This document shows, one piece after another, positions 8,728 through 42,396 of a stretch of 64,000 nt of DNA. Below the pieces are notes generated by a model. The model did no database searches and had not been told where the DNA came from. It saw nothing but the letters and a program-made list of their open reading frames with translations. Numbering within the stretch: position 1 is the first letter of the stretch; every line of letters starts with the position of its first letter. The stretch is taken from IMG/VR virus record IMGVR_UViG_3300037297_000066, positions 248,001 through 312,000 of that record. One strand, given 5' to 3'. The position numbers and the translations under genes were made by a program.

Positions 8728-9051
8728 ATGGCCAGAAAACTTTACCTCGTGACCCGTAGCGACCTGCCCTTTGAGCAACAGGCCGTGCAGGCCGCTCACA
8801 GCCTCCACAGCTTCGAGAAGGAGCACCGGGAGGTCTATGTGACCTGGAGGGATGAAAGCCAAACCCTGGCCTTTCTGGCGGCTCCCAATGAGGGAGCTCT
8901 CCAGAGGCTCTTGGAGAAAGCTGAGTGGGCTGGGGTCCCTGCTGCTGGATTTCTGGAACCAGACTTGGGGAACTCCTTGACAGCAGTGGCTGTCGGGCCG
9001 GCCGGAAAGAAACTTTGCAGGCGTTTTCCATTGGCTATCTCTGGTGTATAG
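8728..9051 (+). CDS. peptidyl-tRNA hydrolase PTH2-like protein
   Basis: KLYLVTRSDL..QAVQAAH N-terminus and EPDLGNSLTAVAVGP C-terminus. Confidence 0.75.
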   Translation: MARKLYLVTRSDLPFEQQAVQAAHSLHSFEKEHREVYVTWRDESQTLAFLAAPNEGALQRLLEKAEWAGVPAAGFLEPDLGNSLTAVAVGPAGKKLCRRFPLAISGV

Positions 9052-9058: not shown

Positions 9059-9334
9059 GTGCCTCCCCGGAATCCTCTCTACAAGGTGGGCTCGGTCATC
9101 GAGACCAGTGATGGCCTGATGGAGGTTCGTCCGGAACGCTACGACTATGAGAACGCCAAACACACCTGCCCTGTCTGCGGGGGCATTGGTTGGGTTTGGC
9201 AAGGAACTTTCACCTGTGATGGGAACATCAACTGTCAGGCCAGAGCTCTCGTAGCCTGCGGTACTGTGTTTGTTCCTGCTCACAATACGTGGCAACAGAG
9301 AGTGCTAGATCAGAAGCATTTGGAAGGAAGGTGA
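9059..9334 (+). CDS. hypothetical zinc-binding protein
   Basis: CPVCGG and FTCDG..C. Confidence 0.5.
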   Translation: MPPRNPLYKVGSVIETSDGLMEVRPERYDYENAKHTCPVCGGIGWVWQGTFTCDGNINCQARALVACGTVFVPAHNTWQQRVLDQKHLEGR

Positions 9335-9351: not shown

Positions 9352-9555
9352 ATGCACATCAATCATCGACGTAAGAACGTCCATCGGGCCAAACACCACA
9401 ACTGTCGGGTCATGCCATTGATGAACTCATCGAGTCCGTTTCGTCAGGTCAAGAATCGAGAGGCTAGACGAAACGCTCGTAATCTCATCAAGGGCGGCCT
9501 CTTCGACAACATTCCTGCGAAGTACCCCAGGAACGTTCGCTGGGAATACTGGTAA
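9352..9555 (+). CDS. small basic hypothetical protein
   Basis: 67-aa ORF. Confidence 0.55.
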   Translation: MHINHRRKNVHRAKHHNCRVMPLMNSSSPFRQVKNREARRNARNLIKGGLFDNIPAKYPRNVRWEYW

Positions 9556-9556
9556 T

Positions 9557-9634
9557 GCTCTCGGACCCCGTGGAAGGGGCGACGGATTCTAACCCCGTGT
9601 CAGAGTGAGGGTTCAACTCCCTCCGAGAGCGCCA
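9557..9634 (+). tRNA. tRNA-Sup(CUA), amber anticodon
   Basis: GCTCTCG/CGAGAGC acceptor, loop TT-CTA-AC, GAGGG-TTCAACT-CCCTC, ends GCCA. Confidence 0.75.
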
Positions 9635-9635
9635 T

Positions 9636-9714
9636 GGGGACGTAGCTCAGTGGTTGAGAGCGGCGAGCTCTAAACTCGTGTCTGTCGGGGGTTCGAGTCC
9701 CTCCGTCCTCACCA
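9636..9714 (+). tRNA. tRNA-Sup(CUA), amber anticodon
   Basis: GGGGACG/CGTCCTC, D-arm GCTC-AGTGGTTGA-GAGC, GCGAG-CT-CTA-AA-CTCGT, ends ACCA. Confidence 0.85.
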
Positions 9715-30192: not shown

Positions 30193-30278
30193 GGGGTCGG
30201 AATAGTTGGCTGGTGCCAACAGCGGTCTGTAAAACCGTTGTCTCTGACGGGGTGGTTCGATTCCACACGGCCCCACCA
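30193..30278 (+). tRNA. tRNA-Tyr(GTA)
   Basis: CT-GTA-AA, long variable arm, ACCA. Confidence 0.85.
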
Positions 30279-30301
30279 CAGAAAGGAACACCAACGCCCA
30301 T

Positions 30302-30375
30302 GGGGGTGTAGCTCAATTAGGCAGAGCAGCGGGCTTTTAACCCGAAGGTTGTGGGTTCGATTCCCACCACTCCTA
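30302..30375 (+). tRNA. tRNA-Lys(TTT)
   Basis: cloverleaf, CT-TTT-AA. Confidence 0.9.
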
Positions 30376-30382
30376 CGAAGAC

Positions 30383-30460
30383 GCCTCAGTAGCTCAATTT
30401 GGTAGAGCAGCGGACTCTTAATCCGAAGGTTTGTGGGTTCAATTCCCTCCTGGGGCACCA
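30383..30460 (+). tRNA. tRNA-Lys(CTT)
   Basis: CT-CTT-AA, ACCA. Confidence 0.9.
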
Positions 30461-30465
30461 AGACA

Positions 30466-30618
30466 ATGGAGAGTGAAGATCTGAAGAAAGCTGATCCGGG
30501 AGCCTTGCGTAGGTTGGCTACTTTTCTCGGGCTCAAAGAGGTTGAAACCCTTACAAACAAGCAGGTGAAACGCTGGATCAAGCTAGCGACCAGACCCTTG
30601 AAGATCACTATGTACTGA
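30466..30618 (+). CDS. small hypothetical protein
   Basis: MESEDLKKAD ORF between tRNAs. Confidence 0.45.
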   Translation: MESEDLKKADPGALRRLATFLGLKEVETLTNKQVKRWIKLATRPLKITMY

Positions 30619-30622
30619 AAAT

Positions 30623-30696
30623 ACCGGGTTAGCCCAGTGGTAAGGCAGCAGGCTCTGATCCTGTGTACGAGGGTTCGACTCCTTCACCCGGTGCCA
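30623..30696 (+). tRNA. tRNA-Gln(CTG)
   Basis: CT-CTG-AT, GCCA. Confidence 0.88.
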
Positions 30697-30893
30697 GATA
30701 GTAGGGACTAGTTCCCTTCGATCCTTGACAACTTGACAGGACTTTGGATGTCCGCCTCGCCACCTCCTAAGGGTGGAAACGTGGACTCTCAGATCCCCCC
30801 GGTATGGAACCGGAAACGGCTGAGGTTCGCAGCGGTGGTTATCCTCTCCTGAAATTGCCCGTGGGGTTCGTCGGAAACGGTGACCCCACATTT

Positions 30894-30965
30894 GCCCCTG
30901 TAAGCATCTGGTGAGGCTACTAGCTTGTCACGCTAGCGAGGAGAGTTCGATTCTCTTCAGGGGCG
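30894..30965 (+). tRNA. tRNA-Asp(GTC)
   Basis: CTAGC-TT-GTC-AC-GCTAG. Confidence 0.85.
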
Positions 30966-30967
30966 CC

Positions 30968-31133
30968 GACTGACATCCCGCCGAGATGAGCCTACAAGCA
31001 ATCTGCTGGTTCGAATCCAGCCTCCGGCACCGGGGCTTAGCCCTATCCCTGCCGGAGTGGCCAAATTGGAAAAGGCAACAGTCTGAAGAAACTGTGTACA
31101 ACGCAATCCCGCTCTCACACTCGGATGTCAGTC
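30968..31133 (+). ncRNA. circularly permuted tRNA-like RNA with conserved terminal helix (Y-RNA-like), copy 1
   Basis: 11-bp terminal stem GACTGACATCC/GGATGTCAGTC; T-arm precedes acceptor hairpin, D-arm and anticodon-like arm. Confidence 0.8.
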
Positions 31134-31136
31134 TAT

Positions 31137-31209
31137 CCCAAAGTAGGCAAACTGGTACGCCGGACCGCTGTTAACGGTTTGATTGAGGGTTCGAATCCTT
31201 CCTTTGGGG
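31137..31209 (+). tRNA. tRNA-Asn(GTT)
   Basis: CT-GTT-AA. Confidence 0.85.
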
Positions 31210-31213
31210 CTAT

Positions 31214-31295
31214 GCTCAGGTGGCGGAATGGCAGACGCAGTCGGTTGAGGGCCGGCCGTCCTAGTGACGTGGGAGTTCGAGTCTCCCCCTGAGCA
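31214..31295 (+). tRNA. tRNA-Leu(GAG)
   Basis: TT-GAG-GG, long variable arm. Confidence 0.88.
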
Positions 31296-31301
31296 CCCTA
31301 T

Positions 31302-31377
31302 GGTGGCTGTACTCGTCTGGTGACGAGGGCTGACTGTGAATCAGCGGAGGCGGGTTCGATTCCCGTCAGTCACCCCA
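31302..31377 (+). tRNA. tRNA-His(GTG)
   Basis: CT-GTG-AA, G-1:C73, CCA. Confidence 0.85.
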
Positions 31378-31378
31378 A

Positions 31379-31462
31379 GCCTAAGTGGCGGAATGGCAGA
31401 CGCCCCGGTCTCAAAAACCGGTGTCCCTAGTGGGCGTGAGAGTTCGAGTCTCTCCTTAGGCA
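31379..31462 (+). tRNA. tRNA-Leu(CAA)
   Basis: CT-CAA-AA, long variable arm. Confidence 0.9.
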
Positions 31463-31566
31463 CTGACCCAGCGCAATTTCCTCCAACAGGTTGGCGTAGA
31501 CGTGGTTCGAGTCCACGAGGATACCGTTGGGTACGGCTTGTCGAGGGGCCCCTTGGCAAGTCTATT

Positions 31567-31651
31567 GCTACAGTGGCGGAATGGCAGACGCGCCAGCCTC
31601 AGAAGCTGGTATCCTTGAATGGGTGTGGGAGTTCGAGTCTCCCCTGTAGCA
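31567..31651 (+). tRNA. tRNA-Leu(CAG)
   Basis: CT-CAG-AA, long variable arm. Confidence 0.9.
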
Positions 31652-31658
31652 CTAGTTT

Positions 31659-31732
31659 GGGATCGTAGCTCAATTTGGGAGAGCACTGGCCTTGCAAGCC
31701 GGGGGTTAGGGGTTCGAGTCCCCTCGGTTCCA
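31659..31732 (+). tRNA. tRNA-Ala(TGC)
   Basis: CT-TGC-AA. Confidence 0.88.
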
Positions 31733-31740
31733 CTACGTTC

Positions 31741-31814
31741 GGGTCTAAGGCTGAGGTAGCCGGCTGGTTTCCAAGTCCAGTGACGATGGGGTTCGATTCC
31801 TCATAGACCCGCCA
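31741..31814 (+). tRNA. tRNA-Trp(CCA)
   Basis: loop TT-CCA-AG, G73, CCA. Confidence 0.7.
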
Positions 31815-31973
31815 GACGACATCCCGCCGGGATGAGCATACAAGCAAACGTTGGTTCGAATCCAACCTTCCCCACCAGGGCCTAGCCCAACCAATGGGGA
31901 AGTAGCCTAGTGGATAGGCAGCGGAAAGTAACTCCGTCGCAAGACTGAACCGCTCTCACACTCGGATGTCGTC
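31815..31973 (+). ncRNA. circularly permuted tRNA-like RNA (Y-RNA-like), copy 2
   Basis: 10-bp terminal stem GACGACATCC/GGATGTCGTC; acceptor CTTCCCC-ACCA...GGGGAAG. Confidence 0.8.
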
Positions 31974-31983
31974 AAACTTTCAT

Positions 31984-32057
31984 TGCGAGGATAGAGAAAG
32001 GGTGTCTCACGAGCTTCATGGGCTCGGGAACATCGGGTTCAACTCCCGACCTCGCTA
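31984..32057 (+). tRNA. tRNA-Met(CAT), 1:72 mismatch
   Basis: CGAGC-TT-CAT-GG-GCTCG. Confidence 0.7.
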
Positions 32058-32058
32058 C

Positions 32059-32133
32059 GGGACCGTAGTACAAGGGTAAGTGCGCACGCCTGATAAGCGT
32101 GAAACGAAGGTTCAACTCCTTCCGGTCCTACCA
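32059..32133 (+). tRNA. tRNA-Ile(GAT)
   Basis: CT-GAT-AA, ACCA. Confidence 0.88.
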
Positions 32134-32297
32134 ATCGAGCGTCCCGCCGAGATGAGCATACAAGCAATATGTTGGTTCGAATCCAACCTCCCCCCCTAGG
32201 GCCTAGCCCAACCAAACGGGGGAGTAGCCTAACGGTAAGGCAGCGGACTCTTAATCCGTGCGAAAGCATACCCCGCTCCCTCACTCGGACGCTCGAT
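32134..32297 (+). ncRNA. circularly permuted tRNA-like RNA (Y-RNA-like), copy 3; Lys(CTT)-type anticodon arm
   Basis: 11-bp terminal stem ATCGAGCGTCC/GGACGCTCGAT; GCGGA-CT-CTT-AA-TCCGT. Confidence 0.8.
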
Positions 32298-32301
32298 TTT
32301 T

Positions 32302-32378
32302 CAGGGTGTAGCTCAACCTGGTAGAGCACTGGTCTGGGGGACCAGGGGTTGTCGGTTCAAGTCCGGCCATCCTGACCA
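32302..32378 (+). tRNA. tRNA-Pro(GGG)
   Basis: CT-GGG-GG, ACCA. Confidence 0.9.
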
Positions 32379-32546
32379 AAGATGCGGGCTAGCATGCATC
32401 TTAGAACTGAGCAGTCCCAGTTAGGAGCCTGGAAGCAAGTGTGCCTCGGTCTGGTGACGCACCTGTCTCGTCGGTGGGTGTAACGGTTTGATTCCGTGGT
32501 AGAGGGGCGGCTACTTAGGTGTGCGCAACACGGCTCGGTTCGACTT

Positions 32547-32623
32547 CAGGGCGTAGCTCAACCTGGTAGAGCGCACGGTTCGGGACCGTGAGGTTGGAGG
32601 TTCAAGTCCTCTTGCCCTGACCA
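32547..32623 (+). tRNA. tRNA-Pro(CGG)
   Basis: TT-CGG-GA, ACCA. Confidence 0.9.
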
Positions 32624-32750
32624 CATCAACTGTCGGAATGGTTGTCTAGGGACGCCTAGCCGAAGGGTTCGACACCTTCCTGGGAGCGGCGGTAGGAGGT
32701 TGGTTCGATTCCAACCCCGGCAGTGTTCTCGACCAGGCGAGGATGTGGAT

Positions 32751-32826
32751 GCTTCAGAAGCTAACCTGGTGGAAGCGCCTGCCTGAAGAGCAGGAGGTGT
32801 TGGTTCGATTCCAACCTGAAGCACCA
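32751..32826 (+). tRNA. tRNA-Phe(GAA)
   Basis: CCTGC-CT-GAA-GA-GCAGG, ACCA. Confidence 0.8.
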
Positions 32827-32827
32827 T

Positions 32828-32899
32828 CGCAGCGTACCAAGGTGGTACCGGTCTTTCATACGGACTTGGGCTGAGGTTCGATTCCTCTCGCTGCGACCA
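32828..32899 (+). tRNA. tRNA-Met/Ile2(CAT), short D-arm
   Basis: TT-CAT-AC, ACCA. Confidence 0.65.
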
Positions 32900-32900
32900 T

Positions 32901-32973
32901 GCGAGACTTGCTACCGGGTGGTGGCACCTGCCTTACAAGCAGGAGAAGCAGGGTTCGAGTCCCTGGTCTCGTA
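32901..32973 (+). tRNA. tRNA-Val(TAC)
   Basis: CCTGC-CT-TAC-AA-GCAGG. Confidence 0.75.
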
Positions 32974-32975
32974 CC

Positions 32976-33065
32976 GGGCCGGCAATGCGGACTTCAAGGT
33001 TCGCCACGACTCACAGTGCCCTTATGGGCCCGGGTCGTGTCGTCTAAGTTGGAAGACACCGGCCC
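32976..33065 (+). ncRNA. tRNA-like RNA permuted at the anticodon loop (YrlA-type architecture)
   Basis: outer GGGCCGG/CCGGCCC; order T-like arm, closed acceptor stem, D-arm GTCT-AAGTTGGA-AGAC. Confidence 0.6.
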
Positions 33066-33073
33066 TAACTCAT

Positions 33074-33145
33074 TCCAGGGTAGCTCAGTGGTAGAGCGGT
33101 CGGCTGTTAACCGATTGGCCGGGGGTTCGAATCCCTCTCCTGGAG
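33074..33145 (+). tRNA. tRNA-Asn(GTT)
   Basis: CT-GTT-AA. Confidence 0.9.
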
Positions 33146-33244
33146 CCGGAGCTTGCCTCTCTAATAAACTAGCAGCCTGGGAGAGCGTACTGGGTTCGAA
33201 GTCCGGGCAACAGTCTTTGTTGTAAGCTGCAGCAAGTTCCATTT

Positions 33245-33320
33245 GCGGGTGTAACTCAATTGGTAGAGTGTCAGCCTTCCAAGCTGAACGTTGAGAGTTC
33301 GAGTCTCTTCACCCGCTCCA
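33245..33320 (+). tRNA. tRNA-Gly(TCC)
   Basis: CT-TCC-AA, TCCA. Confidence 0.92.
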
Positions 33321-33418
33321 CCCCGTCAAGCCCGAAAGGGAGACGGGCGTGGGGGTCCTCCTAGATGCGGCATTGTCCGTGTGTTGCCTAGGCGACATCC
33401 TAGGAGTCTCCCCTGTTT

Positions 33419-33493
<75 letters not shown>

Positions 33494-33495
33494 GT

Positions 33496-33569
33496 GTCAC
33501 CGTAGCTCAATCTGGTAGAGCAGAGCTTTCGTAAAGCTAAGGTTGGAGGTTCAATTCCTCTCGGTGGCT
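33496..33569 (+). tRNA. tRNA-Thr(CGT)
   Basis: TT-CGT-AA. Confidence 0.85.
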
Positions 33570-33576
33570 CCCGTAT

Positions 33577-33653
33577 GTCCCCATCTGCTAGTTGGCCTAG
33601 GCACCCGGACTCTCACTCCGGAAACACGAGTTCGAATCTCGTTGGGGACACCA
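33577..33653 (+). tRNA. tRNA-Glu(CTC)
   Basis: CT-CTC-AC, ACCA. Confidence 0.88.
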
Positions 33654-33713
33654 ACTTTCCTAAACCCCTCTGCTTTACCCTCGGGGAAAGTCCTCGGGTT
33701 TAGGCACAACCAA

Positions 33714-33786
33714 GGCCCCATCTTCTAATGGTTAGGAACCTCGGCTTTCACCCGAGAAATGGCGGGTTCAACTCCCCCTGGGGTCG
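33714..33786 (+). tRNA. tRNA-Glu(TTC)
   Basis: CT-TTC-AC. Confidence 0.85.
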
Positions 33787-33816
33787 CTATTGCTATTATA
33801 GGTCTCTTTAGAGGAG

Positions 33817-34104
33817 ATGACCATGTCTGACCAAGAATCGAGAATTGCTCGCAATGTTGCTCTTCGTTACCTACGAGCTAGGAGGAAGAGCTCCTACCCG
33901 GAGTTCTTGAAATTCTTGGGAGAAGTCTTTTCGAAGCTTCACGGGAAGGACAGTTACTCGGCTAGCGAGCTTCGGACTCAGGCTCAGAAGCATCCTGACT
34001 TTGGTACGTATGAGAAGGACTACCAAGCCTATCTAGAGAAGGCTTGGCACGATCCTGCTTCGAAGTTGGTTCGAGACGGATACAAGTACGTCTGGAAGTC
34101 CTGA
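33817..34104 (+). CDS. hypothetical protein with NVALRY motif
   Basis: 95-aa ORF, AGGAG RBS. Confidence 0.7.
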   Translation: MTMSDQESRIARNVALRYLRARRKSSYPEFLKFLGEVFSKLHGKDSYSASELRTQAQKHPDFGTYEKDYQAYLEKAWHDPASKLVRDGYKYVWKS

Positions 34105-34150
34105 GGGGACAAGTTTTTGCTCGTCTTCGTGACGAGTGGGGGGTCGCTAC

Positions 34151-34223
34151 GCTTCGGTAGCTCAGTCGGTAGAGCAGTAGACTGAAAATCTATGTGTCGA
34201 TGGTTCAATTCCGTCCCGAAGCA
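34151..34223 (+). tRNA. tRNA-Phe(GAA)
   Basis: CT-GAA-AA. Confidence 0.9.
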
Positions 34224-34733
34224 CTACCGTAGTTTGGCCAGTTCCTTCTCTCGAACAGACTTCTCGTTGGGGTTTTGGTAGGCGACGGCATTGGCCACAT
34301 CGATGATCCCCACGTTGACAAGAGCAGCTGCTCCAATCGTCTGGTTCCCCTGGTTGACCTTCACGTGGCTATTGGACTCGTTTGCGGCTGAAAGGTGCTG
34401 AGCCTCGTTGGACTTCCAGTCCTTCAGGTAAAGATCCAACATCTGTAGAGCAGGTTTGGAGGCTCCTGTGAGAGGAAGATTGGATCGCAGGATACGTTCT
34501 GCGACCTTGGCCCCGGCCTGTCCGATCTTGAGAGCCTTGTCGTAGGCCCGGTCGAGCTTGACCCGGTCTCTGTCGTCGAACATGGCTCCTCGACTCTCCA
34601 CGTAAGTGAAGACTTTCGCTAGTTTGCCCAGGTCATCGTTTCTTTTTTGAGCGGGGGCTATGGCAGCTACGAGTTGACCTTGGGGGCCTCTCTTGGCGGC
34701 GTACCTTGCAGCGATTCGTTCTTCGAGGGTCAT
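34224..34733 (-). CDS. hypothetical protein with RIAARY motif
   Basis: 169-aa ORF antisense to the tRNA array. Confidence 0.7.
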   Translation of the reverse strand: MTLEERIAARYAAKRGPQGQLVAAIAPAQKRNDDLGKLAKVFTYVESRGAMFDDRDRVKLDRAYDKALKIGQAGAKVAERILRSNLPLTGASKPALQMLDLYLKDWKSNEAQHLSAANESNSHVKVNQGNQTIGAAALVNVGIIDVANAVAYQNPNEKSVREKELAKLR

Positions 34734-34784
34734 AATTCAGTTCCAGTAGAGGGCCTCAGTGGAGCTGGTTGACAAATTCTTTTT

Positions 34785-34860
34785 CAGGGCGTGGTGCAAT
34801 CTGGTAGCACGCCGGCTTTGGGTGCCGGTGGTTGGAGGTTCAAATCCTCTCGCCCTGACC
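34785..34860 (+). tRNA. tRNA-Pro(TGG)
   Basis: TT-TGG-GT. Confidence 0.9.
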
Positions 34861-35042
34861 CGGTGGCATGGAGCCTCTGACCGAAAGGTCACGATGATCG
34901 GGAGATCGTGAATGGCGCAGGATCACTGCCCTTTTTCTAGAGTAGGGTAAGCCCTGACAGTCGTTCCGTGGACGTCGGTTACTGGGTTCGAGTCCCAGCA
35001 CTGTTCCAATTTCTACGCCAGTCATTCCGGCTGGTGTATTTA

Positions 35043-35091
35043 CCCCAGCAGACACACTTGGACGGTATGCCGTCCCGCCGTGTCGGGAGAG
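35043..35091 (+). promoter_or_regulatory. copy of the conserved RNA helix overlapping the RBS of the TROVE-like gene (putative autoregulatory operator)
   Basis: GACAC-ACTT-GGACGG-TATG-CCGTCC-CGCC-GTGTC directly before GGGAGAG-ATG. Confidence 0.6.
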
Positions 35092-37011
35092 ATGAAAATG
35101 GTAGACCAGGTACAGCGTGAGAACCTGGGTCCGGCAGAGCGTATCATCAACGTCCTGTTGACCTACGAGGACCACATGGTCCACAACCGGGTTGGGATCG
35201 TAGAGCCCGATCCAGACAGCCAGATCGGCCTTCGCTGGACCCAGGCAACTTGGGTCGAGAAGGACGGCAAGAAGGTTGTCTACAAGCTCCTCCCTGGGGC
35301 CCGGGGACGAAACGGAAAGACCACTCGGCGCAAGGTCGAAGTGGGCACTCTCTGGAACGACGGCACGGTTCGCAGTGCCGATCGTCGGAAGATCGGGGAG
35401 CTCCGTCAGCCTGGCCTCTTTCCCGAAGTGGCAGTCTGGATGTACCGACAGGTGGCTGAGATCTACAAGCTCGACAACGAGTTCTGTGCTCGTTGGGCCA
35501 GCTACGCTTACTCCCAGACCCACCGAGATCTGAAGGTGGTACTGGCGGCCTTCCTCCTGGTTCAGGCTCGCAAGGGTGACCCTGTGATGGACCAGGGCAA
35601 GGTAGCCTTCTTCGACGACGACTTCCGTGACGTGGGTGAGGCAATGTGCCTTCACTACGGTGGGAAGTCCGACAAGTCTGCTCTCGATGCGAAGCTTCTG
35701 CTCCGCATTCGGAAGATTCTGGAGGTCCCTGAGATCGCCCAGATCAACCGAGATCTTGGGTTCGGGAAGTCGGCTCGGAGGGCTTACCTGGGTCGTTGGC
35801 CCAGGGTCGTTCAGAAGTGGCTGAGATACCGGGAAGACAACCCGGTTCTGCTGCGGGGCTTGGTCAACAAGGGTGCTTTCCGAGCAACCGTACAGGACTT
35901 GGCTCAGCAGTCTCGGTACAGTCCGTCGAGCCCCCTCTTCTACCAGATCCTTCGGTGGCCTCAGAAGCAGGCTGACGGGGGACACCGGAAGATGGCTCTC
36001 GACCAGAAGGTGACCAAGCAGGAATCCTGGGCGGGTAAGACCGAACAGGAGATCTGCGAGATCATCACCAGTCAGAGGACTGGTTGGAAGCGTGTCACGA
36101 CTCTGGTTCCGTCAGAGATTGGGGTTACCCGAGCCATCATGGCAGCAGCTGTGGAGGCAGGGTCCCTCTCGGACAAGGACCTGATCAACCACACGCCACT
36201 TTTGGAAGAACTGGGCCTCTTGCAGGACCAGGACGTTCGGGGGCGTTGGGAGGCTGCGCTTCAGGCTGCCGAGGACCGTCGAGCTGCTAACGTGGCTCGT
36301 AACGTCAAGAGCCAGCAGACTCGTGAGCAACTCGAAGGGGCTGCTGACCAGTCTGTCCTGAAGGCTGTCGAAGAGGTGGCTACAGGGATTCGGGTCTTCT
36401 TCTGTGTGGACCGATCTTCCTCGATGGGTATCGCTATCGAGGCAGCCAAGGAGCACATCGAGAAGTTCTTGCCTGGGTTCCCGCCCGATCAGCTCTTCAT
36501 CTGTGCCTTCAACTCGTCTGCTCGGAAGGTGACTCTCAAGCAGCACTCGTCGGTTGGAGTTCGGGAAGCTTTCCGGGGCATGGTCGGCTCTGGAGGCACG
36601 GACTACGGTGCGGCTGTACGCTTCTTCTCGAAGCCCGAGTACATGCCAGCCGAGGAGGAGGTTTCGCTCTTCTTCTTCATCGGAGACGAAGCAGCGGACA
36701 CTCGTTCCTTGGTTCAGGCCGTTCGGAACTCGGATCTCAACATCGTGGCCTTCGCTCTGGTGAAGGTCGTGTCTCCCGGTTGGGACCCTGGACTCTGTGT
36801 TCAGGAAGCTGCAGCCCAGTTGGGTATCCCTGTGATCCCGATCGACGAGAAGGTGTTCTCGGACGTCTATGCGACCCCGAGGATCCTTCGTGACCTGATC
36901 GCAAATACGCCGGTAGCTCAGACCCCTGGTCACAGGGAGGTTCGGCGGGTGACCCTTCTGGACACCATTCTGGACACTGAGCTGCTCAAGAAGCCCCTGT
37001 GGGCTGCATGA
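35092..37011 (+). CDS. TROVE/Ro60-like RNA-binding protein with C-terminal vWA domain
   Basis: helical N-terminal region with TROVE-like pattern (LDAKLLLRI..YLGRWPRVVQKWL..FRATVQDLAQQSRYSP); MIDAS FCVDRSSSMG, GGTDYG and FIGDE. vWA is secure; TROVE is inferred. Confidence 0.7.
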   Translation: MKMVDQVQRENLGPAERIINVLLTYEDHMVHNRVGIVEPDPDSQIGLRWTQATWVEKDGKKVVYKLLPGARGRNGKTTRRKVEVGTLWNDGTVRSADRRKIGELRQPGLFPEVAVWMYRQVAEIYKLDNEFCARWASYAYSQTHRDLKVVLAAFLLVQARKGDPVMDQGKVAFFDDDFRDVGEAMCLHYGGKSDKSALDAKLLLRIRKILEVPEIAQINRDLGFGKSARRAYLGRWPRVVQKWLRYREDNPVLLRGLVNKGAFRATVQDLAQQSRYSPSSPLFYQILRWPQKQADGGHRKMALDQKVTKQESWAGKTEQEICEIITSQRTGWKRVTTLVPSEIGVTRAIMAAAVEAGSLSDKDLINHTPLLEELGLLQDQDVRGRWEAALQAAEDRRAANVARNVKSQQTREQLEGAADQSVLKAVEEVATGIRVFFCVDRSSSMGIAIEAAKEHIEKFLPGFPPDQLFICAFNSSARKVTLKQHSSVGVREAFRGMVGSGGTDYGAAVRFFSKPEYMPAEEEVSLFFFIGDEAADTRSLVQAVRNSDLNIVAFALVKVVSPGWDPGLCVQEAAAQLGIPVIPIDEKVFSDVYATPRILRDLIANTPVAQTPGHREVRRVTLLDTILDTELLKKPLWAA

Positions 37012-37019
37012 GGTGAAAC

Positions 37020-37958
37020 ATGGGTTGGAGAGATCTGCTTCAGACCGAGGATGAGACGTTCGTCTCCCCCTGGGTGGGAGGAAGGTCTCTCCGATCCTTC
37101 GATCGCTTCTGGCGTATCGAGGGAAAACTCCCTCAAGAGCATGGTTGGCATAGGTTCCGTCTGGCGGGCCGGAAGGCTTGTTGGACGGGGCCTGCTGATC
37201 AGTCTGGGGAGCTCAGGGATCGTCTGAGAGGCTACCTGGTAGCTGACCGACTCGTGCCAGATGAGGCTCGGGTCGAGACAGATCCAATCAAGCTGGCTCA
37301 GGGATTCGAGAGAGTTCACCTGATCGAGCCTGGTTTGGATCGGTTCGTTCGGGTAGTCGCTGGCCGGTCCTTCGAGGACGGCCCTCTCATCTACGACAGC
37401 CAGGAGTTCCCTCTTGGTCCCGAGGATGAGGTTCTTCAGGCATACTTCGACGAAGCCAAGTCTGTGGACCATGTCTCGGGGGTCGCCCCTGCTTTGGAGG
37501 CTGCGTTTCGTTTCGAATCGTGGCATCGGGAGGAGATCCGGCGGCGTCGAGAAGAGGAACGAAAGCGTCGGGAGGAAGAGGATCGGCAGCGTCAGTTGGA
37601 GGCTCGGAGACAGGAAATCATCGAGACTTTGGGGGATGCTGCTGGACGTCGGGAACTGGCTCGTTACGACTTTGCTGAGGCAGCCAGAGCTGCTTTGGCG
37701 GTAGGAGGAGCTCAGTACCTAGACTCTCGTCCCTCCTACAACAAGGGCGAGATGGTTGTTCGGTACCGGATGAACGGCCGGGGGTTGGAGTGCACTTGTG
37801 ACGCTCAGACCCTGAGGATCATCGATTCCGGCTGCTGTCTGACCAACCACGCCACTGGGGAGCAGACCGACACGAGGTTCACCCTGGAGTCACTTCCGGG
37901 GGTCATACAAGAAGCTGACCGTCGGCACATCTTGGTGGTGTATCGTCACGTAGACTGA
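37020..37958 (+). CDS. conserved hypothetical protein; C-terminal E2-like (UBC-fold) candidate
   Basis: coiled coil followed by IIDSGCCLT..FTLESLPGVIQEA, resembling the E2 GxICL..TLxxL pattern; operon context. Confidence 0.45.
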   Translation: MGWRDLLQTEDETFVSPWVGGRSLRSFDRFWRIEGKLPQEHGWHRFRLAGRKACWTGPADQSGELRDRLRGYLVADRLVPDEARVETDPIKLAQGFERVHLIEPGLDRFVRVVAGRSFEDGPLIYDSQEFPLGPEDEVLQAYFDEAKSVDHVSGVAPALEAAFRFESWHREEIRRRREEERKRREEEDRQRQLEARRQEIIETLGDAAGRRELARYDFAEAARAALAVGGAQYLDSRPSYNKGEMVVRYRMNGRGLECTCDAQTLRIIDSGCCLTNHATGEQTDTRFTLESLPGVIQEADRRHILVVYRHVD

Positions 37959-37966
37959 GAGGTACC

Positions 37967-38338
37967 ATGCAGGAATCAGGCGTTGTTTTGGATCTGAAGG
38001 AGCAGCCGATCTATTGGCACACCCCAGCGGATCGGACAACGGGGGCTATTCCTGACAGCCACACTCTGTGGGAGGTCCTCTGGGAGAATCGTGAAAACCT
38101 GTCTGGGTTTGCCCACAGTCATCCTGGCCGTGGGCTTCCCGGGCCATCCTACACGGATGTCACGACATTCTCCTCCATTGAGCGAGCTCTCGGAAAGAAG
38201 CTCAATTGGTGGATCACCAGCGAGGATCGGGTCGCCTTGGTCAGGTGGTTTGGTCCTGGGAAACACGACTACAAGGCACTTGCCGTAGAAGATGAACTGG
38301 TCTGGGTACCCAGACTGAGAGAACTTTCCTACCCTTAG
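37967..38338 (+). CDS. JAB/MPN metallo-isopeptidase
   Basis: N-terminal E and GFAHSHP..GPSYTDV (HxH-x7-S-x2-D). Confidence 0.85.
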   Translation: MQESGVVLDLKEQPIYWHTPADRTTGAIPDSHTLWEVLWENRENLSGFAHSHPGRGLPGPSYTDVTTFSSIERALGKKLNWWITSEDRVALVRWFGPGKHDYKALAVEDELVWVPRLRELSYP

Positions 38339-38366
38339 GGGTAGACACGAAGGAAGGTCAAATCAG

Positions 38367-38627
38367 ATGGCAATCGAAGAGCATGAAGCACGTGTGAACA
38401 TCACCTGGGCTCAGCAGAACGGCGATCTGCCGGACCCAGTGGCATTCGACGCAACGGATGCCAACATCCTGACCTGGGCCACCGAAGCCGTCCGTGGTGG
38501 AGATGTCCCTGGAATCGAAGCTGACCAGAACGCCGACTTCGACGGGTACGTTGTGGAGCGATTCGCCTCCAAGGAGGAAGTCCCCTACAACCGGCTCGTG
38601 GTTCGGCCGAAGGCAGAGTTTGGTTGA
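38367..38627 (+). CDS. ubiquitin-like (beta-grasp) protein candidate
   Basis: 86 aa, strand-strand-helix-strand pattern, ends LVVRPKAEFG; lies between JAB and ThiF. Confidence 0.65.
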   Translation: MAIEEHEARVNITWAQQNGDLPDPVAFDATDANILTWATEAVRGGDVPGIEADQNADFDGYVVERFASKEEVPYNRLVVRPKAEFG

Positions 38628-38669
38628 TAACCAGGTGGGTGGCCTTCGGGCCATCCGCTGTCACCCAAG

Positions 38670-39257
38670 ATGGAGATGAAGATGCAGACAGTGATGGTAG
38701 TGGGTGTGGGGGCCCTCGGATCCCACGCCATCCAATTCCTCCGAGGAGCAGCCCGGATTCGTGCCATCGACTTCGATCGGGTGGAGCAGAAGAATACCCT
38801 TTCTCAGTTTCACCCCAGGAATTCGGTGGGCAAGAACAAGGCCCAAGCCCTCCAGCAGGCGATGCAGTTCCTCTGGGGGATCAAGATCGAGGTCATTCCT
38901 CACAAGCTCGTTCAGGGCAACGCTCAGGTCGTTCTCAAGGGAGCGGACCTGGTTCTAGACTGCCTGGACAACGGGGCTTCCCGTGAGATCCTGCAGAAGG
39001 CTGTTCGGCAGGCCGGTATTCCGTGTCTTCATGGAGCTCTCTCTGCCGGGGGCATGTTCGGCCGGGTCATCTGGGACGATCTGTTCAATATCGACTACGA
39101 GTCTGGAGAAGGGATTGCCACTTGCGAGGATGGGGCTTTCCTGCCGTTCATCGGTCTGGTGAGCACCTACCTGGCTCGGAGCGCCCAAGCCTGGCTAGAA
39201 ACTGGGAAGCAGCTTAGCTTCCAGGTCTACCCTTCGGCCCCCGCCACCAGGATTTAG
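38670..39257 (+). CDS. ThiF/E1-like adenylyltransferase
   Basis: VVGVGALGS, IDFDRVEQKN, KNKAQAL and DLVLDCLDN motifs. Confidence 0.92.
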   Translation: MEMKMQTVMVVGVGALGSHAIQFLRGAARIRAIDFDRVEQKNTLSQFHPRNSVGKNKAQALQQAMQFLWGIKIEVIPHKLVQGNAQVVLKGADLVLDCLDNGASREILQKAVRQAGIPCLHGALSAGGMFGRVIWDDLFNIDYESGEGIATCEDGAFLPFIGLVSTYLARSAQAWLETGKQLSFQVYPSAPATRI

Positions 39258-39261
39258 GGGG

Positions 39262-39289
39262 TTGAAAACAAGCTCCAACGGTGTATAGT
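39262..39289 (+). promoter_or_regulatory. promoter-like TTGAAA-N16-TATAGT upstream of the tRNA-like RNA trio
   Basis: contains the GGTGTATAGT motif seen at 4 intergenic sites. Confidence 0.55.
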
Positions 39290-39361
39290 GCATCCGTTGG
39301 TTTCTGGAGAACATCGTGAGAAAGCTGGAATGAGACTTTGCCGGGTTTCGGCCCGGCTTCT

Positions 39362-39504
39362 GGGGCTTCACAGGGGATGTGGTTCCCCGCCTGTTTTTTG
39401 GAACAGGAGCATCAGCTCTACCCCGCCACCACACTCGGTTTCCTAGGAAACCCGCCGTAGTTGGCCTACAAGCATTACCGGTTCGACTCCGGGAAGCCCC
39501 GCCA
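39362..39504 (+). ncRNA. CCA-ended tRNA-like RNA with the conserved helix inserted in the variable region
   Basis: GGGGCTT/AAGCCCC-G-CCA; T-arm CCGG-TTCGACT-CCGG; ACTCGG-TTTCC-TA-GGAAA-CCCGCC. Confidence 0.75.
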
Positions 39505-39513
39505 CTCAAAAAC

Positions 39514-39649
39514 GCCGCTCTTGAGGCACGGTCGCCTCACTTTCCCTACAAGAAAGCTAAGCTAGCCCCGCATGTACACTCGGCCCTCTCGGGGGCCCGC
39601 CGTATGGTGCATACAAGCAATTCCGGTTCGACTCCGGAGAGCGGCGCCA
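39514..39649 (+). ncRNA. second CCA-ended tRNA-like RNA with the inserted conserved helix
   Basis: GCCGCTC/GAGCGGC-G-CCA; D-arm TGAGGC/GCCTCA; ACTCGG-CCC..GGG-CCCGCC. Confidence 0.75.
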
Positions 39650-39777
39650 GGACATCCCGCAGGAACGTGCCTACACGCATACAGCTCAATTGGTAGAGCA
39701 TCGGATTCCTATTCCGAGGGTTGGGGGTTCAAATCCCCCTATGTGACCTTCCTACCGCACCTCCACTCGGATGTCCT
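39649..39777 (+). ncRNA. conserved helix enclosing a tRNA-Arg(CCT) body (39676-39746)
   Basis: AGGACATCC/GGATGTCCT stem; inner TCGGA-TT-CCT-AT-TCCGA, no CCA. Confidence 0.7.
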
Positions 39778-39877
39778 AATCTCTTAATCCCAAGCCCCCA
39801 GGAGAAGATCTCCTGCGTGTGGCTAAGGGACACCTTCTAGGGGTTCATGATCAATCTACTTGTTGGGACTGTTGATC

Positions 39878-40264: not shown

Positions 40265-40269
40265 TAGTG

Positions 40270-41067: not shown

Positions 41068-41109
41068 TGTTCGCTTTTCGCAGATTGCAGGAAGTCATGC
41101 TCACGCCGG

Positions 41110-41310
41110 TTGCGCCGGCAGGAGGACTTCATGCATCACAAGAGAAGACGCCCCAAGAATCGACGTGCTGGTTGTCTGTTCTGTAAGCCGCACAAGATGA
41201 ACGGAATCAGTAAGCTGGGTCAAACCAAGCCTAGTCTGTGTAGGACCCTTCAAGAAGACTTTTCGGGTCGTGCGCCGCATGGGTACTACCTCACGAAGTT
41301 GGGCAAGTGA
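41110..41310 (+). CDS. small basic Cys-containing protein
   Basis: HHKRRRPKNRRAGCLFCKPHK. Confidence 0.5.
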   Translation: MRRQEDFMHHKRRRPKNRRAGCLFCKPHKMNGISKLGQTKPSLCRTLQEDFSGRAPHGYYLTKLGK

Positions 41311-42392: not shown

Positions 42393-42396
42393 CTAT

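What the first reader, a model, noticed from the sequence alone, without database searches (positions are those of the whole stretch)
9557..9714. Two tandem amber-anticodon (CUA) tRNAs outside the main array, in a genome region that still uses TAG as stop
Seen: two different CCA-encoding cloverleafs (discriminators G and A), both with CTA centred in a 7-nt loop. Many secure genes here end in TAG (groEL, MTase, HNH 42778, phosphatase) and long ORFs contain no in-frame TAG, so this window is not globally recoded. A PTH2-like gene lies 500 nt upstream. Known: some large phages carry amber suppressors and recode TAG mainly in late genes. Inference: timed readthrough, or recoding of genes outside the window, possibly with two different amino acids.
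Basis: partly seen in the sequence, partly recalled or inferred. Interest (0 to 1): 0.65.

Follow-up and report, generated by a model that had tools for sequence, protein, structure and literature searches.

The report
Amber tRNAs paired with Pth2 hydrolase
Two real stop-codon-reading (amber) tRNA genes sit in a giant phage that otherwise uses the normal genetic code, and they belong to a widespread, apparently undescribed two-gene unit (a Pth2-like peptidyl-tRNA hydrolase plus a stop-reading tRNA) whose purpose is not code switching and is still unknown.

Summary
Window 9557-9634 and 9636-9714 (+) are two different cloverleaf tRNAs with a CUA anticodon and an encoded CCA. They lie 20 kb from the main array of 50 tRNAs.

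The window belongs to a complete 437-kb phage genome with terminal repeats, so "recoding outside the window" could be tested, and it fails:
- Code 11 gives the best coding density everywhere.
- TAG ends 186 of 579 called genes, including chaperonin, methylase, terminase and helicase.
- Frames that continue past TAG are no commoner than past TGA or TAA.
- The genome has no release-factor gene and none of the four aaRS families searched.

The useful lead is the Pth2-like gene 506 nt upstream. Its homologues were grouped into 48 phage lineages.
- In 37 lineages the gene is accompanied by a stop-anticodon tRNA (CUA, rarely UUA or UCA). In 33 the tRNA lies within 1.5 kb.
- The tRNA is on the same strand, and in 17 lineages it is the only kind of tRNA nearby.
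- The unit occurs in mycobacteriophages, Acinetobacter phage ME3 and many huge uncultured phages, in what look like standard-code neighbourhoods.

These tRNAs covary as true tRNAs, often have an unpaired 31-39 position, and differ widely in acceptor identity. My best reading is a stop-codon decoding plus peptidyl-tRNA clearing unit. The mechanism is inferred, not shown.

The parts
8728..9051 (+). Pth2-like peptidyl-tRNA hydrolase gene (107 aa). It ends in TAG. This is the partner gene of the module.
   Evidence: - Pfam PF01981: E 6e-9, 36.5 bits.
- A profile of 36 phage homologues hits archaeal Pth2 structure 2zv3 at E 3.7e-11.
- AlphaFold model pLDDT 95. The 14 best Foldseek hits are Pth2 structures, TM 0.61-0.81.
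- Only one PTH2 gene in the genome.
9059..9334 (+). Small ORF (91 aa) between the hydrolase and the tRNAs. No known family.
   Evidence: ORF list and own gene call. No Pfam or PHROG hit. Not conserved in other module loci.
9352..9555 (+). Small ORF (67 aa) that ends in TAA one base before tRNA-1. Weak coding score.
   Evidence: No family hit.
9557..9634 (+). tRNA(CUA)-1. Discriminator G, encoded CCA, loop UUCUAAC closed by an A31.C39 mismatch, atypical G8, 8-nt variable loop.
   Evidence: ARAGORN. Rfam tRNA 30.5 bits. The same anticodon-arm type is found next to Pth2-like genes in Cane17, Phabba, L008/L097, L079 and L058.
9636..9714 (+). tRNA(CUA)-2. Discriminator A, encoded CCA, loop CUCUAAA. 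The D and T arms resemble those of phage tRNA-Trp genes.
   Evidence: ARAGORN. Rfam tRNA 61.1 bits. The best blastn matches are phage tRNA-Trp genes and the Yersinia phage fHe-Yen9-04 tRNA-Sup-CTA. Alignment.
30193..54043 (+). Main tRNA array (50 sense tRNAs). Together with one tRNA-Gly outside the window it covers 19 amino acids. There is no tRNA-Trp(CCA).
   Evidence: ARAGORN on the window and on the whole genome.
54878..55261 (+). Phage tmRNA (tag ANDNAIADQAIAA, tag frame ends in TGA). A second ribosome-rescue element in the same genome.
   Evidence: ARAGORN. Sequence. No SmpB gene found.

Best explanation
Shown:
- The two genes are genuine elongator-type tRNAs whose anticodon reads the UAG stop codon.
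- They sit at the 3' end of a + strand gene block that contains a Pth2-fold hydrolase gene.
- This pairing (Pth2-like gene plus a stop-anticodon tRNA, same strand, usually within 1.5 kb) is a conserved unit in many unrelated large phages.
- This phage uses the standard code throughout and has no release factor and none of the four aaRS families searched.

Inferred:
- The tRNAs are made together with the hydrolase and charged by host synthetases. The two probably use different synthetases.
- They compete with host RF1 at UAG.
- The hydrolase frees tRNA from the peptidyl-tRNA that results.
- The unit therefore acts in trans on translation termination. It would be a back-up or rescue route that keeps ribosomes and tRNAs cycling when normal termination at that codon is slow, blocked or attacked, for example by A-site mRNA-cleaving toxins or loss of release-factor activity.
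- It does not turn UAG into a sense codon of phage genes.
- Which amino acid is inserted would matter little.
For: tRNA reality:
- Searches detect both tRNAs.
- 35 module tRNAs pair in 94% of cells against 64% in shuffles (0 of 500 shuffles reach it), and 20 of 21 pairs show compensatory change.
- The loops are of the CUCUAAA or UUCUAAA type with U33 and A37.

Standard code:
- Density is 0.876 under code 11 against 0.838 with TAG read as sense. TAG terminators occur in every 20-kb bin.
- There is no TAG-specific excess of in-frame continuation.
- Terminase, helicase, chaperonin and methylase all end in TAG.
- The genome is complete. No RF-1 domain and none of the four aaRS families searched were found.

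Linkage:
- 67 of 80 IMG/VR loci with the hydrolase carry a stop-anticodon tRNA, and in 53 of 77 it is the nearest tRNA.
- By lineage (hydrolase proteins clustered at 60% identity), 37 of 48 have one and 33 of 48 have one within 1.5 kb. In 17 it is the only kind of tRNA within 6 kb either side.
- Internal control: within 1.5 kb of the hydrolase there are 37 stop and 42 sense tRNAs; at 1.5-6 kb there are 6 and 122 (p 4.5e-13). All 43 stop tRNAs are on the hydrolase strand.
- No other neighbouring gene is shared by more than 7 lineages.
- Cultured examples: Mycobacterium phages Cane17 and Phabba, Acinetobacter phage ME3, and the Yersinia/Erwinia Eneladusvirus phages at 3 kb.

The neighbourhoods look standard-code across GC 23-69%.

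Stop decoding, not amino-acid identity, appears to be the conserved property:
- Three different stop anticodons occur.
- Anticodon switching occurs within one hydrolase cluster (L023/L073 have UUA, L056 has CUA).
- Acceptor stems and discriminators differ widely, and a few of the tRNAs have long variable arms.

Position 31-39 is unpaired in 24 of 68 stop tRNAs against 13 of 291 sense tRNAs from the same DNA (p 6e-11).

The same genome also encodes a tmRNA.
Against: - There is no expression, charging or suppression data. No RNA runs hold this phage.
- A termination back-up would be most useful for a heavily used stop codon. Instead, the codon read by the module tRNA is the rarest stop in 20 of 37 lineages, the middle one in 15 and the commonest in only 2. 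That looks more like limiting collateral read-through.
- This genome shows no excess of back-up TGA or TAA after TAG. The median extension is 37.5 codons.
- Pth enzymes are known to act on free peptidyl-tRNA, not inside the ribosome, so the link to termination needs an extra step (drop-off) that is assumed.
- The phage hydrolases lack the Lys-bearing loop of archaeal Pth2 and have Glu at the aligned catalytic Asp, so their substrate could differ.
- 11 of 48 lineages have the hydrolase without a stop tRNA nearby. XacN1 keeps its two CUA tRNAs far from its Pth2 domain.
Confidence: 0.4

Rival explanations
1. Programmed read-through of one or a few specific phage genes. The tRNAs would set a host-independent ratio of a normal protein to a C-terminally extended or fused one, or would gate a short gene such as a lysis gene that has an early in-frame TAG.
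For: - 19 TAG-terminated genes are followed in frame by another coding stretch, several with TAG directly abutting ATG.
- My scans need 25-50 open codons on each side, so a short gene with an early TAG would be missed.
- The module tRNA usually reads a minority stop codon, as expected if only a few sites matter.
- In L059 the hydrolase gene itself carries one in-frame TGA, and a tRNA(UCA) lies 3.3 kb away.
Against: - In-frame continuation after TAG (10%) matches TGA (8%) and TAA (11%), and downstream starts lie within 0-8 codons.
- The XacN1 authors read through all 18 of that phage's amber stops and found no added similarity (PMC5852040).
- It does not explain why a peptidyl-tRNA hydrolase is the conserved partner.
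- The amino-acid identity of the tRNA is not conserved.
Confidence: 0.2
2. A weapon or counter-defence aimed at the host or at rival elements. Read-through of host, prophage or defence-system genes that end in the targeted stop codon disturbs them, or the tRNA occupies the A site at stop codons to block toxins that cut mRNA there. The hydrolase would then protect the phage's own translation from the side effects.
For: - The unit is conserved in lytic large phages of very different hosts.
- It travels with other translation-repair genes: a tmRNA here and CCA-adding enzymes in 4 lineages.
- From my own knowledge, not tested here: RelE-type toxins cut A-site stop codons with UAG preferred, and tmRNA rescues the products.
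Against: - No defence or anti-defence family was found among the neighbours.
- The phage's own genes end in TAG as often as 32%, so it would hit itself.
- No experimental link exists.
Confidence: 0.15
3. Nonsense-mutation buffering. A suppressor carried by a very large genome masks new stop-codon mutations, for example CAG or TGG changed to TAG. This would raise robustness, and the hydrolase would merely be a neighbour with general tRNA-recycling use.
For: - The unit is concentrated in very large phage genomes of 150-500 kb.
- Amber is one mutation away from Gln and Trp codons, and tRNA-2 has a Trp-like body.
- A 2026 NAR paper states that suppressor tRNAs in standard-code bacteria decode stop codons that arise by nonsense mutation (PMC13092985).
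Against: - It does not explain the tight, same-strand linkage to the hydrolase.
- It does not explain the use of UUA or UCA anticodons in some lineages.
- Selection for robustness is weak compared with the cost of reading through a third of the genes.
Confidence: 0.1
4. Code switch. TAG is a sense codon in late genes or in genes elsewhere in the genome, as in Lak, crAss-like and other recoded phages.
For: Phage amber suppressors are strongly associated with TAG recoding in gut phages (Borges et al. preprint).
Against: - The complete genome was examined. Code 11 is best almost everywhere.
- There is no TAG-specific interrupted frame.
- Terminase and other large genes are open and end in TAG.
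- TAG makes up 32% of stops.
- There is no RF2, GlnRS or TrpRS gene.
- Module neighbourhoods in 48 lineages show no TAG-specific gain in open frames.
Confidence: 0.03
5. Decaying or hitch-hiking tRNA genes without function. Their position near PTH2 would be a by-product of both lying in tRNA-rich regions.
For: - tRNA-1 barely passes the Rfam threshold and has unusual G8 and variable-loop features.
- In some phages the hydrolase does lie inside a big tRNA array.
Against: - In 17 lineages the stop tRNA is the only kind of tRNA within 6 kb either side of the hydrolase.
- Stop tRNAs are 18-fold enriched within 1.5 kb compared with 1.5-6 kb in the same loci.
- There is strong compensatory covariation.
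- The pair is retained in a relative about 95% identical from another habitat.
Confidence: 0.05

Closest known systems
Xanthomonas jumbo phage XacN1: two tRNA(CUA) genes in a standard-code genome (PMC5852040)
   Same: A jumbo phage with a near-complete tRNA set, two amber-type tRNAs, a Pth2-domain protein and a standard code. The authors found no read-through targets.
   Different: In XacN1 the CUA tRNAs lie in the terminal repeats, far from the Pth2 domain, which is the C-terminus of a 280-aa protein. Here the two are adjacent on one strand.
Cluster C mycobacteriophages (Bixzunavirus and Myrnavirus, e.g. Cane17, Phabba): annotated 'peptidyl tRNA hydrolase' followed by 'tRNA-OTHER', plus a tmRNA
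   Same: A homologous hydrolase (35-38% identity) is followed within 0.13-0.25 kb by a tRNA(CUA). That tRNA has the same UUCUAA loop and unpaired 31-39 position as tRNA-1 here. These phages also carry a tmRNA.
   Different: There is one stop tRNA rather than two. It lies inside the main tRNA array. The hosts are Actinobacteria. The tRNA is left as 'OTHER', or called Arg(tct), in the records. I found no paper that discusses the pairing.
TAG-recoded phages (Lak, crAss-like, 'Garnet'/'Agate' etc.) and the Jade 'code-change module' of suppressor tRNA, aaRS and release factor (Borges et al.)
   Same: A phage-encoded suppressor tRNA placed next to a translation-factor gene.
   Different: Those phages have in-frame stops in late genes, depleted use of that stop as a terminator, low GC, and sometimes RF and aaRS genes. 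None of this is seen here. Here the partner gene is a hydrolase.
Classical bacterial amber suppressors (supE, supF, Su7) and the 'extended anticodon' rules
   Same: Anticodon CUA, with U33, A37 and A38, and a weak A-U 31-39 pair or none, as in efficient suppressors (for the loops and for the pair types; the rules are from my own knowledge and the references in PMC13092985).
   Different: Those are single mutant alleles of host tRNAs. These are conserved wild-type phage genes. 35% of them have no 31-39 pair at all, which differs from the 27-43 'unpinned' 4-bp stems described for UGA or UAA reading.
Archaeal/eukaryotic Pth2 (PF01981; PDB 2zv3, 1wn2, 1q7s)
   Same: The same fold (TM 0.74-0.81). 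The conserved Q..HA motif and the Thr-Ala of the C-terminal strand are present.
   Different: The phage proteins are shorter. The Gly-Lys loop is absent, there is a 4-residue deletion after an invariant Glu-Pro-Asp, and Glu stands where Pth2 has the catalytic Asp. PHROGs lists the family as of unknown function.

Membership tests
tRNA (elongator type) | The cloverleaf scores over the Rfam RF00005 gathering threshold. Acceptor, D, anticodon and T stems are present, with T54-T55-C56 and G18-G19. | tested here: met
   61.1 and 30.5 bits against a threshold of 29. ARAGORN. Sequence read. Covariation across 35 homologous-context tRNAs. tRNA-1 is borderline and has G8.
Nonsense (amber) suppressor tRNA | Anticodon CUA at positions 34-36 of a 7-nt loop, with U33 and a purine at 37. 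| tested here: met
   Loops UUCUAAC and CUCUAAA.
Nonsense (amber) suppressor tRNA | The tRNA is aminoacylated and inserts an amino acid at UAG in vivo. | not testable with these tools
   No RNA run holds the phage. None of the four aaRS families searched is in the genome, so charging would depend on the unknown host.
Stop-codon-recoded (code 15-like) phage | In-frame TAG inside genes, especially late genes. Coding density rises when TAG is read as sense. | tested here: not met
   Terminase and helicase are open under code 11 and end in TAG.
Stop-codon-recoded (code 15-like) phage | The reassigned codon is depleted as a terminator. | tested here: not met
   TAG ends 186 of 579 genes, and 38% of genes in the best codon-score quartile.
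Code-change module (suppressor tRNA + aaRS + release factor) | Phage-encoded RF1 or RF2 and a matching aaRS. | tested here: not met
   PF00472 gives only a 15-bit sub-threshold match. PF00749, PF00579, PF00152 and PF00587 give none, in a complete genome.
tRNA-Pyl (ARAGORN's label) | 3-nt variable loop, 6-bp anticodon stem, a single base between the acceptor and D stems, a small D-loop without GG. | tested here: not met
   Both tRNAs have two bases at positions 8-9, G18G19, a 5-position anticodon stem and 7-8-nt variable loops. The label only reflects the CUA anticodon. The pyl genes were not searched.
Pth2 peptidyl-tRNA hydrolase (PF01981) | Sequence match over Pfam's cut-off, and the Pth2 fold. 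| tested here: met
   36.5 bits against 23. Profile against 2zv3 at E 3.7e-11. Model pLDDT 95, TM 0.74-0.81 to Pth2 structures.
Pth2 peptidyl-tRNA hydrolase (PF01981) | Catalytic residues of archaeal Pth2: the Lys of the Gly-Lys loop and the Asp of the D-A-G-x-T motif. | tested here: inconclusive
   The Lys loop is deleted. An invariant Glu77 aligns with the Asp, and Asp79 and Thr85 are also invariant. Activity was not tested.
Pth2-like + stop-anticodon tRNA module (defined in this report) | The hydrolase homologue and a tRNA with a stop anticodon lie on the same strand within about 1.5 kb. | tested here: met
   Window: 506 nt apart, same strand, two tRNAs. The pattern holds in 33 of 48 lineages.

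The most novel reading that the evidence does not exclude
The hydrolase and the stop-anticodon tRNA together form a two-piece substitute for a release factor. The tRNA recognises the stop codon and takes the finished chain. Its weakened anticodon stem (unpaired 31-39) favours loss of the peptidyl-tRNA from the ribosome. The dedicated Pth2-like enzyme then cleaves the protein off. The result is termination without RF1 or RF2, at the price of one extra residue. This would be a new, RNA-guided route of translation termination, carried by many large phages.
Probability: 0.1. Interest if true: 0.9.

Novelty: new variant of a known kind. Interest (0 to 1): 0.62.

Why it matters
Suppressor tRNAs in phages are usually read as signs of a changed genetic code. 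Their presence in standard-code phages (XacN1, Atu_ph07, Summit, cluster C mycobacteriophages) has been noted repeatedly without explanation.

Here a complete genome rules out recoding. The tRNAs turn out to be one half of a conserved unit whose other half is a peptidyl-tRNA hydrolase. That turns a vague puzzle into a testable two-gene problem, and cultured carriers exist: Bixzunavirus on M. smegmatis and ME3 on Acinetobacter.

If the unit is a termination or rescue device, or a counter-defence, it adds a new way for phages to manipulate the end of translation. It would also yield natural suppressor tRNAs with unusual anticodon stems that could be useful for genetic-code engineering. And it warns annotators not to infer code 15 from a CUA tRNA alone.

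Tried and rejected
- **Near-identical DNA in GenBank phages:** none. An exact pattern of tRNA-2 in IMG/VR: none.
- **The 313-aa neighbour (10224-11165, - strand):** no relatives in IMG/VR.
- **Minimum-free-energy folds of the two tRNAs:** not cloverleaves and z-scores are weak. This is uninformative, as is usual for tRNAs.
- **Raw comparison of open frames under alternative codes:** uninformative at 55% GC. It was replaced by a codon-usage-trained caller.
- **Apparent excess of TAG flanked by coding signal:** it came from adjacent same-frame genes (TAG overlapping the next gene's ribosome-binding site or start) and from antisense frames of + strand genes. It vanished once called genes were used.
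- **Back-up stop test after TAG:** no signal.
- **Autoregulation idea (the hydrolase gene ends in the codon its tRNA reads):** not supported. Only 4 of 32 CUA lineages end in TAG.
- **Release-factor compensation for heavy TAG use:** weakened by the rarity of the cognate stop codon in most lineages.
- **Amino-acid identity of the two tRNAs:** not assignable from similarity. The best matches are 65-76%, which is background level. tRNA-2 has Trp-like D and T arms but A73 and G1-C72.
- **Hunt for read-through targets near UUA and UCA modules:** too noisy.
- **Promoter and terminator scan of 7000-10500:** nothing above shuffles.
- **Pfam models for sheath, gp23 capsid and terminase_6N:** no usable hits in this genome. 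PHROGs found the terminase.
- **Read laying:** it showed the pair in a relative about 95% identical, but the table of differences was cut before the tRNAs, so substitutions inside them could not be read.
- **Literature:** seven full-text searches found no paper that notes the hydrolase-suppressor pairing. That is not proof that none exists.
Full report
**What is at the coordinates**

ARAGORN finds two adjacent tRNA genes with anticodon CUA at window 9557-9634 and 9636-9714 on the + strand. Rfam's tRNA model scores the second at 61.1 bits and the first at 30.5 bits, just over the 29-bit threshold.

Read from the sequence:
- Both have perfect or near-perfect 7-bp acceptor stems, T-loops with T54-T55-C56, G18-G19 and an encoded CCA.
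- The discriminators are G and A.
- The anticodon loops are UUCUAAC and CUCUAAA.
- The first tRNA is atypical. It has G at position 8, an extra base before the anticodon stem, an 8-nt variable loop and an A.C mismatch at 31-39.

The main array of 50 tRNAs starts 20 kb downstream, and a tmRNA follows it. A Pth2 family gene (PF01981, 36.5 bits) lies at 8728-9051 on the same strand, 506 nt upstream.

**The genome and its code**

The window is bases 248001-312000 of a single 437,331-bp virus record with direct terminal repeats, rated 100% complete. The phage recurs in wetland and marine-sediment metagenomes, and no RNA data exist for it.

I trained a codon-usage model on the 92 longest frames and called genes under code 11 and with each stop codon in turn read as sense.
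- Code 11 gives 579 genes and the highest density: 0.876 against 0.838 with TAG read as sense.
- The pattern is the same or nearly so in almost every 20-kb bin; TAG-sense is marginally higher in three of 22.
- Stops are TGA 313, TAG 186 and TAA 80, and TAG terminators occur in every bin.
- The long one-strand block at 320-420 kb is 92-99% coding under code 11.

An initial excess of TAGs flanked by coding signal had two causes. One was adjacent same-frame genes, often with TAG overlapping the next gene's ribosome-binding site or start codon. The other was antisense frames. When the test was restricted to called genes, the frame continues past TAG in 19 of 186 cases, past TGA in 25 of 313 and past TAA in 9 of 80. 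A start codon lies within 0-8 codons in nearly all of them.

Secure genes end in TAG:
- Cpn60 chaperonin, DNA methylase and HNH endonuclease in the window.
- The large terminase subunit and a 1472-aa helicase elsewhere in the genome.

There is no excess of TGA or TAA back-up stops after TAG. TAG is not avoided in genes with the best codon scores.

The genome has no gene with an RF-1 domain over threshold. It has no class Ic, Ib, IIb or tRNA-synt_2b family synthetase and no SmpB.

The phage is therefore a standard-code phage without code-change machinery. A single short gene with an early in-frame TAG cannot be excluded by these scans.

**The Pth2 link**

Homologues of the 107-aa hydrolase were first found in eight IMG/VR contigs. 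Each of the four scanned had a tRNA(CUA) within 0.8-1.5 kb.

In GenBank phages the protein occurs in 230 records: 204 mycobacteriophages, plus Erwinia, Yersinia, Acinetobacter, Serratia, Stenotrophomonas, Tenacibaculum, Xanthomonas and Ralstonia phages and five uncultured huge phages. Individual cases:

| Phage | Hydrolase to tRNA | tRNA |
|---|---|---|
| Mycobacterium phage Cane17 | 250 nt | 'tRNA-OTHER', which is a CUA tRNA |
| Mycobacterium phage Phabba | about 130 nt | CUA by ARAGORN, annotated Arg(tct) |
| Acinetobacter phage ME3 (tRNA locus tags gt003 and gt004 in this stretch) | 450 nt | CUA |
| Huge phage LR756500 | 0.8 kb | CUA |
| Huge phage LR745208 | 0.13 kb | UUA |
| Yersinia/Erwinia Eneladusvirus | about 3 kb | CUA |
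| XacN1 and RsoM2USA | not linked | - |

A wider scan with an alignment returned 188 IMG/VR relatives, of which the best 80 loci were kept.
- 67 of the 80 carry a stop-anticodon tRNA within 6 kb either side. In all there are 66 CUA, 3 UUA and 3 UCA tRNAs. The next most frequent anticodon, CAU, occurs 33 times.
- The nearest tRNA is a stop-anticodon tRNA in 53 of 77 loci.

To remove redundancy I clustered the hydrolases at 60% identity into 48 lineages, including the window and the GenBank cases.
- 37 lineages have a stop-anticodon tRNA in the locus.
- 33 have one within 1.5 kb.
- In 17 it is the only kind of tRNA in the locus.

As an internal control I took one locus per lineage. Within 1.5 kb of the hydrolase there are 37 stop and 42 sense tRNAs. 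Between 1.5 and 6 kb there are 6 and 122 (Fisher p 4.5e-13). All 43 stop tRNAs are on the hydrolase strand, and 33 are downstream.

No other gene family accompanies the hydrolase in more than 7 lineages. CCA-adding enzymes do so in 4.

None of the 48 neighbourhoods, which span GC 23-69%, shows a TAG-specific gain in open frames.

**Properties of the module tRNAs**

Thirty-five of them align to a cloverleaf. Ninety-four per cent of cells are paired, against 64% in shuffles (0 of 500 shuffles reach this), and 20 of 21 pairs show compensatory change. They are therefore under selection as tRNAs.

- **Loops.** They are almost all C/U-U-C-U-A-A-A/C.
- **Position 31-39.** It is unpaired in 24 of 68 distinct stop tRNAs but in only 13 of 291 sense tRNAs from the same DNA (p 6e-11). 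Other anticodon-stem positions do not differ. When 31-39 is paired it is nearly always A-U. This is not the 27-43 'unpinned' stem described for UGA or UAA reading. tRNA-1 of the window shares this feature, and its whole anticodon arm, with the Cane17 tRNA.
- **Identity.** Acceptor stems and discriminators (A, G, U, C) vary freely, and a few members have long variable arms.
- **Anticodon switching.** One hydrolase cluster contains both UUA and CUA partners.
- **Tandem pairs.** As in the window, pairs recur in L033, L086, L030, L061 and L021.
- **Which stop is read.** The codon read is the rarest stop in 20 of 37 lineages, the middle one in 15 and the commonest in 2. These are small local samples.

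Taken together, decoding a stop codon is the conserved property. The amino acid inserted is not conserved. The choice of stop looks as if it limits collateral read-through, which in turn implies that the tRNAs really do decode stops in vivo.

**The two window tRNAs**

Neither is close to any other tRNA of the genome. The best matches are 65-76% identical. tRNA-2 has D and T arms like phage tRNA-Trp genes, but it has A73 and G1-C72 where those have G73. The genome encodes tRNAs for 19 amino acids and lacks only Trp.

Which amino acids are inserted cannot be told. The different discriminators make two different synthetases likely. Both tRNAs are present in a relative about 95% identical from a marine sediment sample.

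**The hydrolase**

The family has invariant His24, Glu77, Pro78, Asp79, Thr85 and Ala86, and near-invariant Arg10, Asp12 and Gln21. A profile matches archaeal Pth2 structures at E 3.7e-11. The AlphaFold model (pLDDT 95) matches only Pth2 structures, with TM 0.74-0.81.

Compared with archaeal Pth2, the Gly-Lys loop that carries the catalytic Lys is missing, four residues are deleted after Glu-Pro-Asp, and Glu aligns with the catalytic Asp. The protein therefore has the Pth2 fold with a remodelled active site, and its substrate preference is open. PHROGs lists it as of unknown function.

In the window the gene ends in TAG, so read-through would add 19 residues. Across lineages the hydrolase genes mostly end in a codon that their partner tRNA does not read.

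**How it most likely works**

Shown:
- The tRNAs are real.
- The code is standard.
- There is a conserved co-oriented pairing with a Pth2-fold enzyme.
- The tRNAs have a stop-decoding anticodon and variable identity.

Inferred: the tRNAs are charged by host enzymes and compete with release factor at UAG, and the hydrolase recycles the peptidyl-tRNA that results. My preferred reading is a termination back-up or rescue unit, which fits the tmRNA in the same genome.

The weak point is that the cognate stop is usually a minority codon. That fits a few specific targets, or damage limitation, better than bulk termination. The rivals keep real weight: programmed read-through of a few sites, action against the host or its defences, and nonsense buffering. 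Code switching and non-function are close to excluded.

The most novel reading still allowed is a two-piece release-factor substitute. In it the tRNA recognises the stop, the peptidyl-tRNA drops off, and the hydrolase releases the chain.

**Compared with what is known**

Two CUA tRNAs in a standard-code jumbo phage were reported for XacN1, with no targets found. An opal suppressor is reported in Atu_ph07 and a suppressor in siphophage Summit. Borges et al. note occasional suppressors in standard-code phages and propose that they may precede code change.

I found no paper that notes the hydrolase-tRNA pairing. In several GenBank records the hydrolase is unannotated, or the tRNA is labelled 'OTHER' or given a sense anticodon. 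The tRNAs as such are a new member of a known kind. The conserved module is, as far as I could search, a new variant.

**Caveats**

- The gene calls are my own simple model.
- Lineage counts rest on ARAGORN anticodon calls and on 12-kb neighbourhoods.
- IMG/VR contigs may include fragments of related phages, despite the clustering.
- Nothing here measures expression, charging, suppression or hydrolase activity.

Noticed in passing
whole genome (G000); window 30193-54043: The phage encodes tRNAs for 19 amino acids, but ARAGORN found no tRNA-Trp(CCA). tRNA(CUA)-2 has D and T arms like those of phage tRNA-Trp genes, so it may descend from the missing Trp tRNA.
   Followed up: partly
window 54878-55261: Phage tmRNA with tag ANDNAIADQAIAA. 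The tag frame ends in TGA. No SmpB gene is present in the complete genome.
   Followed up: partly
L059 6001-6312 (IMGVR_UViG_3300028920_000001, 427 kb): The Pth2-like gene has one in-frame TGA (L059 6041-6043), between invariant N-terminal residues and the rest of the protein. A tRNA(UCA) lies 3.3 kb downstream. Neighbouring long frames mostly lack in-frame TGA. Either this is a pseudogene, or the hydrolase is made only when its opal suppressor is active.
   Followed up: partly
L028 5902-5977; L070 5721-5797; L084 5832-5906; L069 4804-4881: GC-rich hydrolase lineages that lack a stop-anticodon tRNA instead carry, next to the hydrolase, a tRNA with the unusual anticodon AAU. If A34 is deaminated it could read AUA. 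This is a second odd tRNA type tied to this gene.
   Followed up: no
L021 7192-7265; L088 3569-3645: Next to the CUA tRNA of these loci lies a second tRNA-like gene that ARAGORN cannot assign. The L021 gene has an 8-nt anticodon loop containing CUAG. These may be expanded-loop stop or quadruplet decoders.
   Followed up: no
module tRNAs of L011, L021, L025, L058, L079, L088, L097, L099, window 9557-9634 and others: The loop-proximal 31-39 pair is unpaired in 35% of stop-anticodon tRNAs against 4.5% of sense tRNAs in the same phage DNA. This trait differs from the published 27-43 'unpinned' stems.
   Followed up: yes
window 8700-8775 and just after 9714, in run X3: A marine-sediment relative about 95% identical replaces 74 nt at the start of the hydrolase gene with 268 other letters. 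It also has about 330 extra letters right after tRNA-2. The tRNA pair itself is retained.
   Followed up: no
L012/L014 (Yersinia phage fHe-Yen9-04 289142-289444; Erwinia phage pEa_SNUABM_44 285459-285761); L017 5462-5532: The Pth2-like gene is unannotated in these GenBank records. Phabba's tRNA is annotated Arg(tct), whereas ARAGORN reads CUA in a UUCUAAA loop with a C.C 31-39 mismatch.
   Followed up: partly
window 17528-18376, 38670-39257, 60092-61684: The phage carries a papain-family cysteine protease, a ThiF-family (E1-like) protein and a GroEL-type chaperonin.
   Followed up: no
G000 215528-215628 (outside the window): A lone 101-nt tRNA-Gly(GCC) call lies far from the array. It is long enough to hold an intron, or it may be a false call.
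   Followed up: no
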